Positions 7,149-15,937 of a DNA stretch of 64,000 nucleotides are shown piece by piece. A program made the translations under genes and the position numbers. The stretch spans positions 1,984,001 to 2,048,000 of the forward strand of contig BQFW01000004.1 of assembly GCA_020891255.1 (NCBI GenBank), written 5' to 3'. The notes under the pieces are model-generated. The model had not been told where the DNA came from. It did not search any database and saw nothing but the letters and a program-made list of their open reading frames with translations. Each line of letters starts with the position of its first letter. Within the stretch, counting starts at the first letter, position 1. Origin of the DNA: Entomortierella parvispora E1425 (taxonomy: Eukaryota; Fungi; Mortierellomycota).

Positions 7149-10100
7149 ATGGGCTCATCTTCAACCGTCATTGGAGGTGAATACCTGGTCCTTGGCAAGA
7201 TTGGCGAGGGTTCGTTTGGTGAGGTCTTTCGAGGTAAGACTTGCAACAATTAGGATCAGAAAAAAAAAAAAAAAAAAAAAAAAAAGAGGGGACAAATGTG
7301 TCAATCCTTCACGTAAACTGGTGCCTTTGCTTCAGTTCTCTTGGAACTCGCGATGGACAGGTCGACAGCGAAACATGGCAGGGCAGCAGACACAAATGCA
7401 GTTTTACCTTGTTCCTGATCGATATCGATGGGATGAGGATCTCTCAATTGCTCGTCAGTTGATCCGACTGTGATATGAACAACTATGCTGATGCTCTCTC
7501 CTTTTCTCACACACCATCCTCTCTTTTTTTTTTTTTTTTTTTTTTATTCACGCCATTCACAGCCACCCACCAGGCTACCGGCGTTGACTATGCAATCAAG
7601 CGCGAGCCGATTAATGTTGAACATCCTCAGTTGGGGCACGAGGCCAAGATGTACGAGCGACTTGCTGGAGGAGGTACAGTGACCCTTTCATTCAGCATTT
7701 ATTTCTGTCTTTTTTTCTGTTGTCAGTGCACCCATGCACCCAGGCATCTCGAGCCCTCACGTTTCCTTCCCCCTCGCCAAAGAAAAAAAGGGTGATCGGT
7801 CATGAAAACAAAAGGTTACCAGCCAACCAACGCGTGGGTTCGCCTGTGGTGTGAGACTACTACTGTCAACAATGGTGAGAGGACTTGTCCCTTGATGCGA
7901 TGTGTGCGCACAGTCCCTCTGTCTCAGTGTCCCTCTGTCTCAGTGCGGTGTGGGTCACCTCAAGGGCTGGAAGAAATTGTTCAAAACGACACTACTGGAA
8001 CGGATCAACTACATCACACTAACAAGCCTCCCACGCCAACTCTGCATGCCTCTATAGCTGGTATTCCTCGTATGCATTGGTATGGTAGAGAAGGCTCCTA
8101 CAATGCTCTGGTCATTGACCTCCTTGGGCCAAACCTGAAGCAGGTGCGCCGTGAGAACGAGAAGTTTCCACTTAGTTTCGTTATTGAGCTTGGAGTACAG
8201 ATCGTAAGGATTGTGTTCACTCTTTTGTTGTTGTTATTGTTGTTGTTGTTGCTGTTGCTGTCCTCCTTCGTTCATCTGACCTTGCGGACCAAATTCGTTG
8301 TACGCATAGATTACTCAACTAGAGTTTATTCACAAGCAAGGGATCGTCTATCGCGATGTAAAGCCCGAGAACTTCTTGTTGGACGACAGCATCGTGTTCC
8401 CAGAGGCTCCGGCAGGCAAGACGCTCACGCCACCAATCTTCCCAGATCATATCATGAGCTTCTTTAACGATACTCGCCGGCGCCAGCACAGTATCGAGTC
8501 TACTCACTCGACCCTCTCCAACCTTTCCTCGTCGCCAACTTCCCCCATTCTGCTGGGCTATGGCAAGCCAAAGTTGTTCATTGTTGATTTTGGATTGGCA
8601 ACGTTTTACCGCGATCCTTCTGGAAAACATATGCATGGCAGGGGTACCGTGAGGCACAAGGTTGGCACTGCTCGATATGCCAGTCTCAACATTCATAACG
8701 GACGAGGTACTTTATTAATTGAGATGAACACTCCTGTCGTCATCTCGAATTGAATGCTAACTAAAGATGTCCCAACTTGTCTTTCATAGAGCACTCTCGT
8801 CGTGATGACATCGAGTCAGTAGGATACATGCTTTTGGAATTCCTTATTGGAACACTGCCTTGGTCTGGGATCGCTGCCAGGAACTCCAAGCAAGGATGGG
8901 CAAAAATGAAGGAAATTAAGGAAGAGATTGAGTTGGATGAGCTCTGCGAAGGTCTCCCTCGGGGGTTTATGACGTTTATCGGATATGCTCGTGGACTGGT
9001 GTTCGATGAGGAACCCGACTATGACTACCTTCGAAAGATACTGACTTCTTCAGCTGGACGTGGAGCTGAGGCACAAACAGTCCGATTTTACAGAGAGCCT
9101 GCTGGTGGAGTGTCGCGGTCGCTCGAGAATTGCTTCAGCGGTCTCCATATCCAGCAACAGCATCCCGCAGCCCCTGCCCAGGAAATTCCTATCAAGAAGA
9201 GCGATCCTTTCAAAACAAAGGAACGTGTGAAGGATAATCCTCTGGAGAACTGGCGCAAACGTCCTCAATACGTGCCAGCTGAGAAAGCCGAGTTCCAAGA
9301 CTACAACCCAGAGTCGCTGTGGACGACCACACCGCCAGACGTGCAAACCTCTGGTGAATTCTCGATTGTAGCTTGCAATGGTGATATCCAAGAGGACCTC
9401 AAGGACCAAATCGATTGGGAGATTGTGCCGGAAAACGGTGGTGAAGTCGACCCGTCTCATAACTGGGGTGAGGTGGACAAGCAGGACATTACCGAATGGG
9501 GCCATGATGATGGCGCTGACGCAGGAACTGTACAGTCGGGCTTTGGTAGTTACCCTCCGTTCAACGTTGGATCATTCCCTGGCGATTCTGCTGCTGAGCT
9601 GATTCCGCACAAGGATGCTCGACCTGGCCCTGATGGCCTGGGGCTTCAGTTTGCTCGGCAATCGCAGCATGCACCTCAAGATGCTAGACTTTACTCGAAC
9701 GAGCCACCGTTTGGCCTTTTGCCACCATCGGCTCGCGTCGCCGCTTTTACCGCACAGGAGCCTTCTGCAGCATCCACTGTCAACGTCGCTGCATCACAAC
9801 CGTCATACACGAGAAACCGTCAATATTCACGCGAATATTCTGGTCGACTGGGTATCGACACATCCCTTGCGGCACCAGTTCATCCTTTAGCTCGCGACTC
9901 TGCCGCGACAAAAACCGACTATCCTGGACATCACTCGCTTTCCCCAAAGTCTCTGTCCTCCTCATTCTCGTCCATAAATGTGCGTTCTGGCCAGGAGGTG
10001 GAGCCTGGAATTGAGCATTCGCAACGCGGATACCCAGTCGAGGCTAGTAGTCCCGTCAAAGTGGGTGGCGCTCAACAACATCATCCATCCTATCATGGCT

Positions 10101-10777
10101 CTCAAGATCGTGCTCATGGACGGTCCCATCGTCCCGACAATGGTTGGGAAGGAGACAGATTGAACCGGGATGGATCTCAAGACGAACACCCTTCTCATTA
10201 CGGTGGTGGACACCGAAGTGGCAGCGAAAACTGGCAGTATCATCGCCAGCATCCTCAGCCACAACATCCGTTTGACAACCGACGCGATCGGTGGCGACCT
10301 GCAGGAGGAGGCAGACCTGGCCCCGCCCATGGCTCTATTGACGGATCAGTGGATAGTCATGAATGGAATCATGGTCGTCGATCGAGACAAGTCTCTGCTC
10401 CAGGAAGTCGATTCCAAGGTGCACCATCCCACCCGAGCCCCAATCCCAACTCCAATAACGCCCCACCGCTGCCTTTGTCTGGCTCCCAGCGACCCCAGTG
10501 GGGGATCCCACCATTTGGCAGTGGAGGCGGGCACCATCCACCATCGCAGCAGCAGCAATCATACCCACCAAAATATCATCGTGCGGCCGAATATGATCAA
10601 AGCCACTCTCAGGGCGGAGGAGGGTATGGCTACAATAGCTACAATGGTGGATACCGCGACCAACGACGTCGATCTTCTCGATCTCGTAAATGTTCCAACA
10701 CGAGTCTTCAAGAGACTTTCAAGAGCAACAACATGAACCTGGTGAAAAACGGCGGCAGTCGTGTGCGGCCCAAGTGA
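7149..10777 (+). CDS. Casein kinase I family Ser/Thr kinase with a kinase-domain insert and a long disordered C-terminal tail
   Basis: Five exons: 7149-7233, 7563-7673, from 8058, from ~8310, and from ~8791 to 10777. Motifs: IGEGSFGEVF, YAIKRE, HPQLGHE, GIPRMHWYG, VIDLLGPNL, YRDVKPENFLL, DFGLA, GTARYASLN and SRRDDIESVGY. Confidence 0.93.
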
Positions 10778-11369: not shown

Positions 11370-14300
11370 TCATGGCCGACCTACTCCCGCACCAAGAGTC
11401 TCTACCCGTTCCAGCAACAACACTTCATCTCCGTCTTCACCTTCATTCTCACCCTCATCCAACATGTCATCCTCCTCTTGGCCATTAATATCATCGCCAC
11501 CATCCTTGTGATCTTGTTCAAGTCGAACCTTGAGTGGGCGCATCGAAGGCAACCCTTCTTCGCCGGCCGTCCTCAATGGTCGAGGAGGGTGTTGATCCTG
11601 ACGCAAGTCCTGAAGGGCCTGAGTTCGCGCTTGGTTCATCTTGTGTTTTTGTCGTCGACGCTCGTGGATCCTTCCTTGTTCCTGAGCCCATTTCGCCACG
11701 GACTCTTCTCGCGTTTTTCGCTCGTCCTGCTCTCCTTCCCGCGCGCCCAATGTCCCTTCTTGGAGATTCAGACCAAGAGTTATCCCTCCCGCCGAAAGAA
11801 TCTCCCCTCGGACCAAGCTCAGGGTCGAGGCTTTGTCGTCCTGATCCTCAGGCTCGGGAGAAGGGACTCTTACTTTGTCACCGCCAGCGCCATGGTCGTT
11901 ATTTTGATCTCGTTTTACCATGACGGAGGGCAGCATCGTTGTCCTCACCGCAGTATGTCCTGCGACTGCCACGGGAGATGGCGGCAAATTGAATAAATCG
12001 TGCGAGGACTTGTAAGCCGAGATAACAGGGTACTGATGATAGTGATGTTCCTCCTCAAAGGCAGCATCAACATCCATAACATCTTCCACCGCCCTGGCTG
12101 GCTCGATTGCCGCATGATATTCTTTGGTCGACGGGGGTAGATTGAAAAGGTCGTGCGAGGACTGATAGGCAGAAATGACGGGATTATGGTGATGATGTTC
12201 CGCTTCATAGGCTTCGTCGACATCCATGATATCCTGGACTGCCTCGGTTGCAGCAGCAACTGCTTCCGACGCATGCGATTCGTGAGAAAGTAGCCTGGCA
12301 GAAGAAGGCATCGGATAGTAGGCTGGTCCACGCGCTAGATGTTGGACGGGTCGCGTTGGTTGAGCCACTTTTGTTTTGGTGGCGTCATGGTCCGGGTCGA
12401 CTTCTCGGATCCTGGTGGCGCGGACTGCATCCTCCGAGTCAGAACTACGATCTGAAAGGAAAGCGGTTTTTGTACTTGGGGTCAACAAAGGTGACAGCGG
12501 TGGAATGGATGAGGAAGTGTCACGCCCAGGATCGGTTTCACTAGGGGGATAGGGCGTTGGAGGTCTTTTTCTTGGGGGTGTATCGTTGGAGCGTTGATCC
12601 GAAAAGAGAGGGTGAGCCTGTTGTCCAATCGTGATCTTCTGCTGCGATCTTGTTCCATTCGAGAGAGTGGGTGTCACCATCCCAGTCATGGTTGACTTGA
12701 TTTGCTGTTGTATGCCTGTCACATCTCGAAAAATACTCTCTGTGGCATTTGGAGGTCGCTGAGAAATGACTGTGTGCAATATGGCTGGAGTGGCAGGAAA
12801 CTGGCGCAAAAGCAACTCTGTCTGAACCGAAGCCTCCATCTGAGCAACAGAATGTGGTAAAGATGACGAGGAGGACGTTGCTATGAGCTGTGGCAAAGAG
12901 TCGGTTTCTCCAGAGGAAGTGACTGTGGCAACACTGAACGTAGTGGCAGTGGTTGTAGCTCGCGATAGTCGGCTATCTCGGCTACTGATTGTCGTTGGCG
13001 GTGCAATTGAGATTTCAGGCACCGTTGCAGGAGCGATTACAAGGTGGCTTTGATATCCTTCGGCTTCGTCGTCTGAAGTCCTTGGATCATCTATTTCCAC
13101 GAGATGGGGGTCCTCGGGTCGAGGGTCTGATGGCTCGTCTGCGGTCTGGGGTATATGTGGAGTCTCTGGAGGAGATCTTGGTCGAGATTCTCGCGAGGCG
13201 CCGTTTGGAGACCGGAGAAGTCGAGGCAGACGCTCCGGAGAATCGCAAAGCGGCGCTTCCAAAATAGACGGTGGCTGGCTCTGGTGGAGAGAATATTCTG
13301 AGTTCCTGGACGGTTGGGATCCCAGACGTCCAACGAGACTTGCTGCACCAGGTTGTCCAGTAACGTCAGCTCGGCTATGATTCTCCGCTGTAAGTGCTGC
13401 TGCTGCTAGGGCCTCACTGGATGCTCCTCCTTGCTGGCTGCTCCCGGATCTGCCTTGAAGTTGGGTAGAGCGTATACGTTGAGTGCGACCTGATTGTCTA
13501 GAGTGCGACGAGCTCTGAGTTAAACGTGGTCCAAGCTCAGTTGCTATCTGGGAGCCACTCCCAAGGAAACTGTGCGGTGGTTTCGTCGAACGTGGAGAGT
13601 GAGAGTAAGAATGATGTTGCGCGTCCTGGTTATTGTAATCAAGATGGTTTTTGCCGCTTCCGTGACCATACTGATAGTAAGGGGGACCTTGTGGCTGTGG
13701 GTGAATGCGGCTGTCGCGGAAGGGGTATGGCGGTCTATGAGCTGCCCGACTGCCCTCTTTGGCCTTCCCATTAAAGTCATATTTGGCCTTGCACCAGCAC
13801 ATCGAGCTCATGAGGAAGATCCCTGCGATCGCAGCAGGCGTGTAGTTGAAATTGGACCGAGTCAATGGCAATGTCGAAGGAAGCATCAAGATCCCTGAGA
13901 GGAATAAGAGCCAAAGGACGGCAATGATGTTCAGCAGTCTAGAGAATGAGCCGAGTGAGAATGGTCCTGGAACATAACGGAGCTGGCCCTCCTTTGTTAA
14001 TCGCAGCCAGAGTGGTATTACTATATCACAAGAAATCCGCAGGAGTCAGCGTCTTTTGTTCACAAAAACGTAGCTGAAGAACATGAAAGCTTTCAACTTT
14101 TTTTTTTTTTTTTTACCGAAACTCAAGTTTGTGCTGACACAAGCGAGGCTTGCAATCCAGTTGAAAGCGTTGTTGTCGCCCCAGTAGAATGGAAATATGG
14201 CGGACATGCATGCGGCTGTGACCAGCCAGGAAATACGCTGGGCTGTCCTTCTTCGAGGATGGAGATGAGTCCAGTACGAGGATTTTGGAATTCCACCGTC

Positions 14301-15937
14301 GCGTGCGAATGAGAAGGCAACTCTAGTCGCTATTCCAAGGCGAATCAATCCTGTAAAAAAAACAGCCGTAAGGACCAACGATATAAAGACACTTCCGAGT
14401 GCCTTTCCCAAAGAGACCTGTTCAGTAGAAGCAGGCGGTCAGCAACGAACAGCAACGAATTAAAAAAAAAGAGATTGAAAATCACTTTTACGCACCAATA
14501 TGACCCGGACGGCCGGAACAGGTTCGTCCAGAAGTCCTTTCATAGGCAGAAGAATACCATAGTTTAGAGCTATGACTAACGGTAAACCAAGGATAAGGCT
14601 GAGGAAGCTCGTCCCTGCTGTAATGCGTGGAATCGTTCGTTCTGGTCGACGACACTCTTCAGACTACAGACAGACAGAAAAATTGCAAAAGGAGGTTAGC
14701 ACAATCTACTGTCTTTGTCGGCACTCTCGGTAATGGAGTACCAGCCTCTGCTTACCATCCGCACGACAGTGTCTTGAGGACAAAACACAAAAGAGGCCAT
14801 CAATGTACTGCTGAGTCCTGCATATAATGCGCTGGAGCTTCCCGAGTAATTCAAATAGGTCGAGAACGGGATGTTGATGAAAGAGGCGTCGATCGGTGAA
14901 GACATTATGATCAGGTTCGCTAGCGCCACTACGGTTCCCATAATGAAGAGGCCTGTATTCGCTCAATTGTGGTTATTAGAAAGTCATCAGTAAACAACTC
15001 TATCTCTGTGACCAGAGCTGGCACGATTTACTGTCCTTGTTGTGGCTTAACTAACCTCCCATCGTAGAAATATAACCAAGGCCGCGGATAGGGAGCAGGT
15101 TAAAGGCCTGCCAGAACAGCACAGCACCTAGGTGGAACATGACCAGCATCCCCGGAGTAGACGAGACCTTGTGCATCGACAGCAAGATTTGGCCCAGGAT
15201 CGATGAGAAATAGAATGCTACTGAGGATGCTGACGCAACCTAGTGGTTCGCCGCACAATGAGGAACGTTAATATATCTATTCCATTCCCAATAGCATCGT
15301 TTTGTCTTTTGCGTTTTGCGCCGATTTACCGAACTGGCAATGGTGAGCCATCCAGTCAGCCAGGTCAAGAAGGCCCTTTGATGTGCAGACCCCAATTGGA
15401 AAACCCAGTGGTGGATCCCTGCAGTGGTTGGGTAGGCAGAAGCAAGCTCTGCAATACATAGGCTGACAAGTATGGACATGGAACCGACGGCGATATAGCT
15501 CCAAGTTGCCCATGCTGGCCCACCATTGGTAAGAGGAAGACCATACAGGGCAACGATCCCACAGAGAACGTTGCTGGCTGTCACCATTATCCCCATCAGA
15601 GTGATCCATGAAAGCCTCCTGGACAAGACCTAACAAAACCAAGCCGTCAAGCCAATCGGTTAGAGGCTACTAAAGATCAACTGGATGAAAAACAACATTG
15701 ATTGTAGGAGGAACTTGCAGGTTTGTAGCCTAGAGAGATGAGGTTGTAGTCGTCAAGGGTCATAAGAGAAGGCGCTGAGCGGACAACCCTGGTGGACATG
15801 GATGGACGTCCTATGGAGGAATTGTTGTCGCTCGAGTCCGGTTCTTTTTGATATTGAGTCATCATAATTGAAGAACTTGAATACGTTGATGCATCGGGTC
15901 TAAGATATGCTGGCTCGAGAGAATGTAGGGGGTGCAT
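11370..15937 (-). CDS. APC-superfamily amino-acid/GABA/polyamine permease (UGA4/TPO5/HNM1-like) with a ~800-aa C-terminal cytosolic extension
   Basis: Motifs: LGYKP|VLSRRLSW, NGGPAWATW, AELASAYPTTAGIHHW, RVAFSFARDGGIP, GPFSLG and NFNYTPAAIAGIFLMSSMCW. The last exon is open from the acceptor near 14020 to the stop at 11370. Confidence 0.88.

What the first reader, a model, noticed from the sequence alone, without database searches (positions are those of the whole stretch)
11976..12233. Twice-repeated tail motif conserved at protein level but saturated at silent sites
Copy A (12233-12129) is DIMDVDEAYEAEHHHHNPVISAYQSSHDLFNLPPS and copy B (12083-11976) is DVMDVDAAFEEEHHYHQYPVISAYKSSHDLFNLPPS. 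Across the 18-codon core PVISAY(Q/K)SSHDLFNLPPS I count 12 synonymous codon differences, 1 non-synonymous difference and 5 identical codons. This is direct evidence that the tail is translated and that the motif is under purifying selection. It parallels the duplicated ~25-aa signalling repeat in the Snf3 tail. The acidic/His cluster could also bind metal.
Basis: partly seen in the sequence, partly recalled or inferred. Interest (0 to 1): 0.7.

Follow-up and report, generated by a model that had tools for sequence, protein, structure and literature searches.

The report
Duplicated docking box in permease tail
A soil fungus (Entomortierella parvispora) carries two anciently duplicated, strongly conserved copies of a ~35-residue peptide box in the long disordered tail of an amino-acid-permease-like membrane protein; the box occurs only in this protein family in Mortierellaceae fungi and is most likely a docking site for an unknown cytosolic partner.

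Summary
Copy A (12233-12129, minus strand) and copy B (12083-11976) share 28 of 35 residues. Silent sites are fully randomised: 10 identical codons against 10.0 ± 2.4 expected by chance, pS 0.96, pN 0.10.

The gene is EMPS_03206 of Entomortierella parvispora. It encodes a divergent ACT-family (APC superfamily) permease with a ~785-residue tail.

A 35-position profile of the box, run against 1.84 billion proteins, found 16 real hits. All are tails of this family. Every hit with a named source is from Mortierellaceae; four metagenome-derived hits have no taxon label.

Most genera carry one box. E. parvispora, a metagenomic relative and Gryganskiella carry two.

A paralogous long-tailed clade keeps the same two half-motifs, separated by 15-30 residues, so the box is bipartite and older than the paralog split. 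In a comparison with the closest relative it is the most constrained stretch of the tail (pN/pS 0.08-0.18 against 0.35 overall).

AlphaFold2 predicts no autonomous fold. The His run is not conserved, which argues against metal binding as the selected function.

The Snf3/Rgt2 parallel is an analogy of architecture only. The binding partner and function remain untested. The scan had already noted the tail (s1-173357).

The parts
11370..15937 (-). Gene for a long-tailed ACT-family (APC superfamily) permease, EMPS_03206 of Entomortierella parvispora. It has about 12 TM helices and a ~785-residue cytosolic tail.
   Evidence: 100% match to P0001. PF13520 and TIGR00907; exon mapping. The upstream part (15937-15480) is inferred from tblastn to the orthologues P0012 and P0025 and is not in the NCBI model. 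Exon ends are +/- 2 nt.
11370..14021 (-). Last exon. One uninterrupted reading frame runs from TM11-TM12 through the whole tail to the stop codon (11372-11370).
   Evidence: The tail is fused in frame to the permease at ORF level. The same holds in the related contig L001.
12129..12233 (-). Box copy A (DIMDVDEAYEAEHHHHNPVISAYQSSHDLFNLPPS).
   Evidence: profile domain score 75.9 bits. pN/pS against the orthologue is 0.08.
12171..12233 (-). Copy A, module 1: acidic-aromatic stretch ending in NPVIS.
   Evidence: alignment. This module is shared with the clade-2 paralogues. AF2 gives a weak helix here (pLDDT 60-74).
12135..12170 (-). Copy A, module 2: AYQSSHDLFNLP.
   Evidence: In clade 2 the SSxxLFxLP part lies 15-30 residues downstream of module 1.
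12084..12128 (-). Linker between the copies (TKEYHAAIEPARAVE); not conserved.
   Evidence: pN/pS is about 0.5 here. The repeat period is 150 nt.
11976..12083 (-). Box copy B (DVMDVDAAFEEEHHYHQYPVISAYKSSHDLFNLPPS).
   Evidence: 72.9 bits. pN/pS against the orthologue is 0.16-0.18. MAFFT aligns the single box of other genera to this copy.
12981..13022 (-). Conserved tail island VPEISIAPPTTISS.
   Evidence: Invariant columns. Present in both paralogue clades.
12729..12758 (-). Conserved tail island RPPNATESIF.
   Evidence: clade 1 only.
12546..12563 (-). Conserved tail island PPTPYP.
   Evidence: It does not fit the canonical PPxY pattern (read by eye).
11592..11741 (-). Long basic helix (…VAKWAQEQGRIHERRRQK…). 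It is the only tail element that AlphaFold2 predicts with confidence.
   Evidence: pLDDT 91-97; the equivalent helix in P0025 scores 73-88; pN/pS about 0.15.
11373..11402 (-). Conserved extreme C-terminus ERVETLGAGVGRP.
   Evidence: The GAGVG[KR] ending is shared by both paralogue clades.

Best explanation
The two copies are a bipartite short linear motif (a 'box') in the intrinsically disordered cytosolic tail of a Mortierellaceae-specific, long-tailed ACT/APC permease.

Module 1 is an acidic-aromatic stretch ending in (Y)PV(I/V)S. Module 2 is SSxDLFxLP. Together they most likely form a fold-upon-binding docking site that tethers a cytosolic partner to the permease. The tandem duplication in the Entomortierella/Gryganskiella lineage doubles the valency.

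Shown here:
- the stretch is coding;
- purifying selection is very strong;
- the duplication is old;
- the box occurs only in this family;
- the box has two modules;
- no autonomous fold is predicted.

Inferred: that the box works by binding a partner, and what kind of partner that is. My split is about 30% sorting or ubiquitin-adaptor machinery (as for the acidic boxes in yeast amino-acid transporter tails), about 25-30% a signalling scaffold in the manner of Snf3/Rgt2, about 10% intramolecular autoregulation, and the rest other.
For: - Codon pattern and saturation.
- Orthologous pairs (A with A, B with B) are closer than A is to B. The linker between the boxes is homologous between the L001 relative and Gryganskiella (shared TAP residues, read by eye). 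The duplication therefore predates those species splits.
- The box has the lowest pN/pS in the tail: 0.08 and 0.16-0.18, against pN 0.18 / pS 0.53 for the whole tail.
- Eleven columns are invariant across 11 boxes from five named genera.
- An exhaustive profile search of 1.84 billion representative proteins gave 17 hits. Sixteen are real, all tails of this permease family, and every one with a named source is from Mortierellaceae.
- The permease-domain tree splits into two clades, each with SH-aLRT 100, and both carry the two modules. The modules are contiguous in clade 1 and 15-30 residues apart in clade 2. Variable spacing of this kind is typical of linear motifs rather than of a folded domain.
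- AF2 of the distal tail gives pLDDT of about 50-74 over the boxes and above 90 only for the downstream helix.
- No Pfam, NCBIfam or PDB match for the tail or the box.
Against: - No partner was identified, and no experiment or RNA data were available (no run was listed).
- The AF2 results come from shallow alignments (22 and 40 sequences), so the absence of a fold or of docking onto the TM domain is weak evidence.
- In Gryganskiella the first box is degenerate, so two copies are not universally required.
- The box matches no known motif class that I could test here.
- Many of the gene models used are fragmentary.
Confidence: 0.7

Rival explanations
1. Signalling box of a nutrient sensor or transceptor. 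The permease-like domain senses a substrate, and the box recruits a signalling protein, as box 1 of Rgt2/Snf3 recruits Mth1/Std1.
For: - The tail is very long (about 700-880 residues) and carries several conserved islands, a conserved helix and a conserved C-terminus in both paralogue clades. That looks more like a scaffold than a simple degron.
- Copy number varies between lineages (two or one), as in Snf3 and Rgt2 (PMC10876965).
- The permease domain scores far below the ACT-family cut-off (248 against 598 bits), so it is divergent.
- There are Ser residues next to the box, and Yck-type priming of the Rgt2 box is known (PMC5170868).
Against: - The carrier belongs to a different superfamily (APC, not MFS).
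- There is no evidence that transport is lost or that any signal is generated.
- SAYQSS does not contain a clean S/T-x-x-S/T spacing.
- The neighbouring CK1-family gene is not a conserved neighbour.
Confidence: 0.25
2. Sorting or degron box. The acidic module, with nearby Ser residues, is recognised by an alpha-arrestin-Rsp5 complex, a clathrin adaptor or Sec24. It would control endocytosis or ER exit of the permease, like the portable C-terminal acidic signal of yeast Mup1, Can1 and Lyp1.
For: - In yeast amino-acid transporters, acidic patches plus nearby phospho-sites in the tails are the established Art1/Art2 recognition signals (PMC7449699).
- The box begins with an invariant D-V-D and an acidic run, followed by conserved Ser residues.
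- A Y-x-x-hydrophobic pattern (YPVI or YNPV) is present in most boxes (read by eye).
Against: - The yeast degron needs proximal lysines. Here the only nearby Lys (DLFK) is Asn in both E. parvispora copies.
- Copy A lacks the Tyr.
- The box lies about 500 residues from the membrane.
- The acidic patches in yeast are loosely conserved, whereas this box is conserved almost residue by residue, including non-acidic positions.
Confidence: 0.3
3. Metal-binding acidic/His cluster.
For: E. parvispora, the L001 relative and Gryganskiella have EAEHHHH or EEEHHYH runs next to Asp and Glu residues.
Against: The His run is lineage-specific. Mortierella has EYNHQY or EYHHQY (one or two His), and Linnemannia has EQYN (none). 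The invariant positions are D-V-D, P, S, Y, SS and DLF, not His.
Confidence: 0.03
4. Calcineurin docking site. PV(I/V)S would act as a PxIxIT-like strand and LFxLP as an LxVP-like element.
For: Thirteen of 22 clade-2 cores (PVISIS, PVISVS) fit the pattern P[^P]I[^P][IV][^P], which I recall from memory. The bipartite layout with variable spacing resembles known calcineurin substrates (my own knowledge, not tested).
Against: None of 19 clade-1 cores, including both window copies (PVISAY), fit the pattern. The best-conserved positions (V2, S4) are the ones that vary in PxIxIT motifs. The two modules are only about 5 residues apart in clade 1. LFxLP is not LxVP.
Confidence: 0.05
5. Intramolecular autoregulatory plug that docks on the cytosolic face of the permease domain.
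For: Tail 'plugs' are known in yeast APC permeases (the C-plug of Mup1, cited in PMC7449699).
Against: The full-length AF2 model of the orthologue P0025 shows no confident contact. The box region has pLDDT 35-45. The model is poor overall (mean pLDDT 50), so this is inconclusive. The box also lies about 350-500 residues beyond TM12.
Confidence: 0.1

Closest known systems
Signalling box of the yeast glucose sensors Snf3 and Rgt2 (25 residues; two copies in Snf3, one in Rgt2)
   Same: A short, conserved box in an otherwise divergent, long, cytosolic C-terminal tail of a transporter-like protein. Copy number is two or one depending on paralogue or lineage. Ser residues lie close by (PMC10876965, PMC5170868).
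   Different: The carrier here is an APC/ACT permease, not an MFS sugar porter. The box is about 35 residues and bipartite. No sequence relationship was shown, and it was not testable here. Partners equivalent to Mth1/Std1 are unknown. No signalling evidence exists.
C-terminal acidic sorting signals of yeast amino-acid transporters (Mup1, Can1, Lyp1; Art2-Rsp5)
   Same: An acidic patch with adjacent Ser/Thr residues in the cytosolic tail of an APC-superfamily amino-acid permease (PMC7449699).
   Different: The yeast signals sit in short tails next to target lysines and are loosely conserved. This box is conserved residue by residue, lies far from the membrane, has no conserved lysine and carries a second hydrophobic module (LFxLP).
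ACT family of APC transporters (TC 2.A.3.4; TIGR00907)
   Same: The transmembrane domain aligns end to end with the family model (positions 2-481 of 482, E 1.4e-73).
   Different: The score is well below the family cut-off (248 against 598 bits). The 700-880-residue tail has no counterpart in the model or in Pfam.

Membership tests
APC superfamily / ACT family permease (PF13520, TIGR00907) | Transmembrane domain matches the family profile over its full length | tested here: met
   P0012 residues 83-540 match profile positions 2-481 of 482, E 1.4e-73; window exons hit PF13520 (E 5.8e-6 and 3.5e-8).
APC superfamily / ACT family permease (PF13520, TIGR00907) | Score reaches the curated family cut-off (equivalence of function) | tested here: not met
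   248 bits against a cut-off of 598. This is a divergent subfamily, so no substrate can be inferred.
Snf3/Rgt2-type sensor tail box | Carrier is an MFS sugar-porter-like protein | tested here: not met
   the carrier is an APC/ACT permease.
Snf3/Rgt2-type sensor tail box | Conserved box in one or two copies in a long, otherwise divergent C-terminal tail | tested here: met
   one copy in most genera, two in E. parvispora, the L001 relative and Gryganskiella.
Snf3/Rgt2-type sensor tail box | Sequence similarity to the 25-residue signalling box | not tested
Snf3/Rgt2-type sensor tail box | Box binds signalling partners (Mth1/Std1-like), and the tail is needed for signalling | not testable with these tools
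   This needs pull-downs and genetics.
Art2-type acidic sorting signal | Acidic patch with adjacent phosphorylatable Ser/Thr | tested here: met
   DxMDVDxxFDEE… followed by S-x-Y-x-S-S. Phosphorylation itself was not tested.
Art2-type acidic sorting signal | Proximal target lysines | tested here: not met
   the only recurrent Lys (DLFK) is Asn in both window copies. Copy B has one Lys (AYK), copy A has none.
Calcineurin PxIxIT docking motif | Matches P[^P]I[^P][IV][^P] (pattern recalled from memory) | tested here: not met
   0 of 19 clade-1 cores match, including both window copies. 13 of 22 clade-2 cores match.
Short linear motif in a disordered region (generic) | A conserved island in a fast-evolving, low-confidence region, with no autonomous fold and variable spacing between sub-modules | tested here: met

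The most novel reading that the evidence does not exclude
Mortierellaceae may have evolved their own nutrient sensors from an APC/ACT permease. The ~800-residue tail would act as a signalling scaffold, and the duplicated bipartite box as the recruitment site for a pathway component. That would be a convergent counterpart of the MFS-based Snf3/Rgt2 system, with two paralogous sensors per genome.
Probability: 0.2. Interest if true: 0.75.

Novelty: new variant of a known kind. Interest (0 to 1): 0.45.

Why it matters
Conserved boxes in transporter tails are where cells attach sorting and signalling machinery. This box is unusually well defined: it is under strong selection, it is confined to one lineage, and two paralogous families carry it with different spacing between its two halves. 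It therefore gives a precise handle (about 35 residues, 11 invariant positions) for finding the partner of an uncharacterised family of long-tailed permeases. These fungi are industrially and ecologically important (arachidonic-acid producers, plant-associated, hosts of endobacteria). If the partner turns out to be a signalling protein, this would be an independent invention of a transporter-derived nutrient sensor.

Tried and rejected
- Pfam and NCBIfam on the tail gave only a sub-threshold DUF3134 hit (E 0.005, 17.6 bits against a cut-off of 25). I dismissed it.
- PDB sequence searches with the permease domain and with the box profile found nothing.
- The ESM Atlas feature search of the distal tail scored 0.81 at best, which is uninformative.
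- AF2 of the distal tail and of a full-length orthologue showed no fold for the box and no docking. The second model is too poor to count as a negative result.
- The PxIxIT/calcineurin idea fails for clade 1.
- Metal binding is rejected because the His run is not conserved.
- An alternative-frame ORF (11945-12331, minus strand) covers the repeats, but its two copies are only 12/34 identical, so it does not explain the conservation.
- No RNA run was listed.
Window exons were searched one at a time by reference, and full-length analyses used orthologous database proteins (P0012, P0025).

Full report
**Observation**

The 18-codon core has 5 identical codons, 12 synonymous differences and 1 non-synonymous difference, exactly as stated.

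Over the whole 35-codon unit:
- Differences fall 5/3/21 on codon positions 1/2/3.
- Nucleotide identity is 72% and amino-acid identity is 28/35.
- The other two frames are poorly conserved, at 12/34 and 13/34.
- Nei-Gojobori gives pS 0.96 and pN 0.10.
- Of 27 same-residue degenerate codon pairs, 10 are identical. Independent draws from the gene's codon usage would give 10.0 ± 2.4.

Silent sites are therefore fully randomised while the peptide is kept. The repeat period is 150 nt. A profile scan of all six frames of the window finds only these two copies.

**The gene**

The repeats lie in one uninterrupted reading frame (14045-11373). It starts in the last transmembrane helices of an amino-acid permease and continues for about 785 residues. 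Upstream exons hit PF13520.

The protein is EMPS_03206 of Entomortierella parvispora (P0001, 100% identity). That genome is described in PMC8759367.

The NCBI model starts inside TM2. The window holds more coding sequence upstream (15629-15480, and an exon at about 15937-15710) that aligns with the N-termini of the Linnemannia elongata and Mortierella sp. orthologues.

Window exons were searched one at a time by reference, and full-length work used database orthologues.

The transmembrane domain matches the ACT-family model TIGR00907 end to end, but far below its cut-off (248 against 598 bits). It has no close relative in the PDB by sequence.

**Conservation of the box**

Orthologous tails from these taxa all carry the box:
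- Mortierella alpina
- M. polycephala
- Linnemannia (zychae, elongata, hyalina, gamsii)
- Dissophora
- Lunasporangiospora
- Gryganskiella
- several unnamed Mortierella strains

In an alignment of 11 boxes, the invariant positions are D-V-D, P, S, Y, S-S and D-L-F.

A 35-position profile was run exhaustively against 1.84 billion representative proteins and gave 17 hits at E ≤ 0.001. Sixteen are tails of this same family. One is a low-complexity false positive. Every hit with a named source is from Mortierellaceae; P0002, P0010, P0011 and P0022 come from metagenome or run assemblies and carry no taxon label.

**Age of the duplication**

Two boxes occur in E. parvispora, in a 76%-identical metagenomic relative (L001) and in Gryganskiella cystojenkinii.
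- A-A and B-B pairs between the window and L001 (pS 0.53 and 0.69) are much closer than A-B pairs (pS 0.96 or more).
- The inter-box linker of L001 and Gryganskiella is recognisably homologous (read by eye).

The duplication is therefore old and shared. In Gryganskiella the first box has decayed (PAISA--SSHDLL), so two intact copies are not obligatory. The E. beljakovae orthologue has one box.

**Constraint along the tail**

Against L001, the tail as a whole has pS 0.53 and pN 0.18. The lowest pN/pS values are at box A (0.08), at box B (0.16-0.18), around the SLVRG island just downstream of box B (0.14) and at a downstream helix (0.15-0.17). The linker between the boxes sits at about 0.5.

**A wider family and a bipartite box**

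A search with the permease domain, restricted to long proteins, returned 41 long-tailed relatives at E ≤ 1e-10. Every hit with a named source is from Mortierellaceae; two hits from run assemblies (P0010, P0011) carry no taxon label.

A tree of the permease domains splits them into two clades, each with SH-aLRT 100. Several genomes have one member of each clade. The window gene is in clade 1.

Clade-2 tails keep module 1 (D-[DE]-S-Y-E-x-E-Y-x-H-x-Y-P-V-I-S). They also keep module 2 (S-S-x-x-L-F-[QR]-L-P), placed 15-30 residues further on.

Both clades also share the PEISIAPPTT island and the GAGVG[KR] C-terminus. The consensus of the alignment of both clades also keeps a VAxWAQEQ helix. The box is thus two modules with flexible spacing, and it predates the paralogue split.

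**Structure**

AlphaFold2 on the distal tail (22-sequence alignment) gives confident structure only for the basic helix (P0001 about 1094-1143, pLDDT above 90). Box A is a weak helix (pLDDT 60-74), and box B is coil (pLDDT 50-59).

A full-length orthologue model is poor (mean pLDDT 50) and shows no docking of the box on the membrane domain. This is inconclusive.

The tail has no Pfam, NCBIfam, PDB or Atlas match.

**Interpretation**

The data fit a fold-upon-binding docking motif in a disordered hub-like tail. What it binds is not known.

Two established precedents exist for such boxes in fungal nutrient permeases:
- Acidic sorting signals read by alpha-arrestin-Rsp5 (PMC7449699).
- The signalling box of Snf3/Rgt2, which recruits Mth1/Std1 after casein-kinase priming (PMC10876965, PMC5170868).

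The box shares features with each (see the membership table) but meets the full definition of neither. I give them roughly equal weight.

Metal binding is unlikely to be the selected function, because the His run is absent from most genera. A calcineurin PxIxIT reading fits many clade-2 cores but none in clade 1.

**Verdict**

The inference of translation and purifying selection is sound. The Snf3 comparison is a reasonable analogy but is not evidence of a sensor.

I found no paper describing this family or box in the library searched. I rate it a new variant of a known kind, namely a conserved docking box in a transporter tail, and of moderate interest.

Noticed in passing
window 7475-10777 (+): A multi-exon casein-kinase-I-family gene with a long low-complexity tail. 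It is convergent with the permease gene, with the 3' ends about 600 bp apart. Exon 8376-8750 matches CK1 alpha/delta structures (E 5e-6). Pfam scans of single exons found nothing. In M. alpina the downstream neighbour is instead an SPX-Ank-GDPD gene, so the adjacency is not conserved.
   Followed up: partly
window 15480-15937 (-): The NCBI model EMPS_03206 appears N-terminally truncated. It starts inside TM2. The same ORF continues upstream to 15629, and a further exon (about 15937-15710) aligns with the N-termini of the orthologues P0012 and P0025.
   Followed up: partly
P0014 (Gryganskiella cystojenkinii), residues 155-187: The first of its two boxes is degenerate (EDIVDVDEVIEAEHHHKNPAISA--SSHDLLKVPP), while the second matches the consensus. 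This suggests relaxed constraint on one copy in that lineage.
   Followed up: partly
clade-2 paralogues, e.g. P0027 1010-1016, P0035 975-981: The module-1 core reads PVISIS or PIISIS, which fits a PxIxIT-like pattern in 13 of 22 sequences. None of the clade-1 cores fit.
   Followed up: partly
P0045 (Haplosporangium sp. Z 11, 2204 aa): This gene model fuses a GTPBP3-like tRNA modification GTPase to a clade-2 long-tailed permease. It is probably an annotation merge of neighbouring genes.
   Followed up: no
window 11945-12331 (-), alternative frame: A 128-codon ORF overlaps both boxes in another frame. Its two repeat images are poorly conserved (12/34), so it is most likely not coding.
   Followed up: yes
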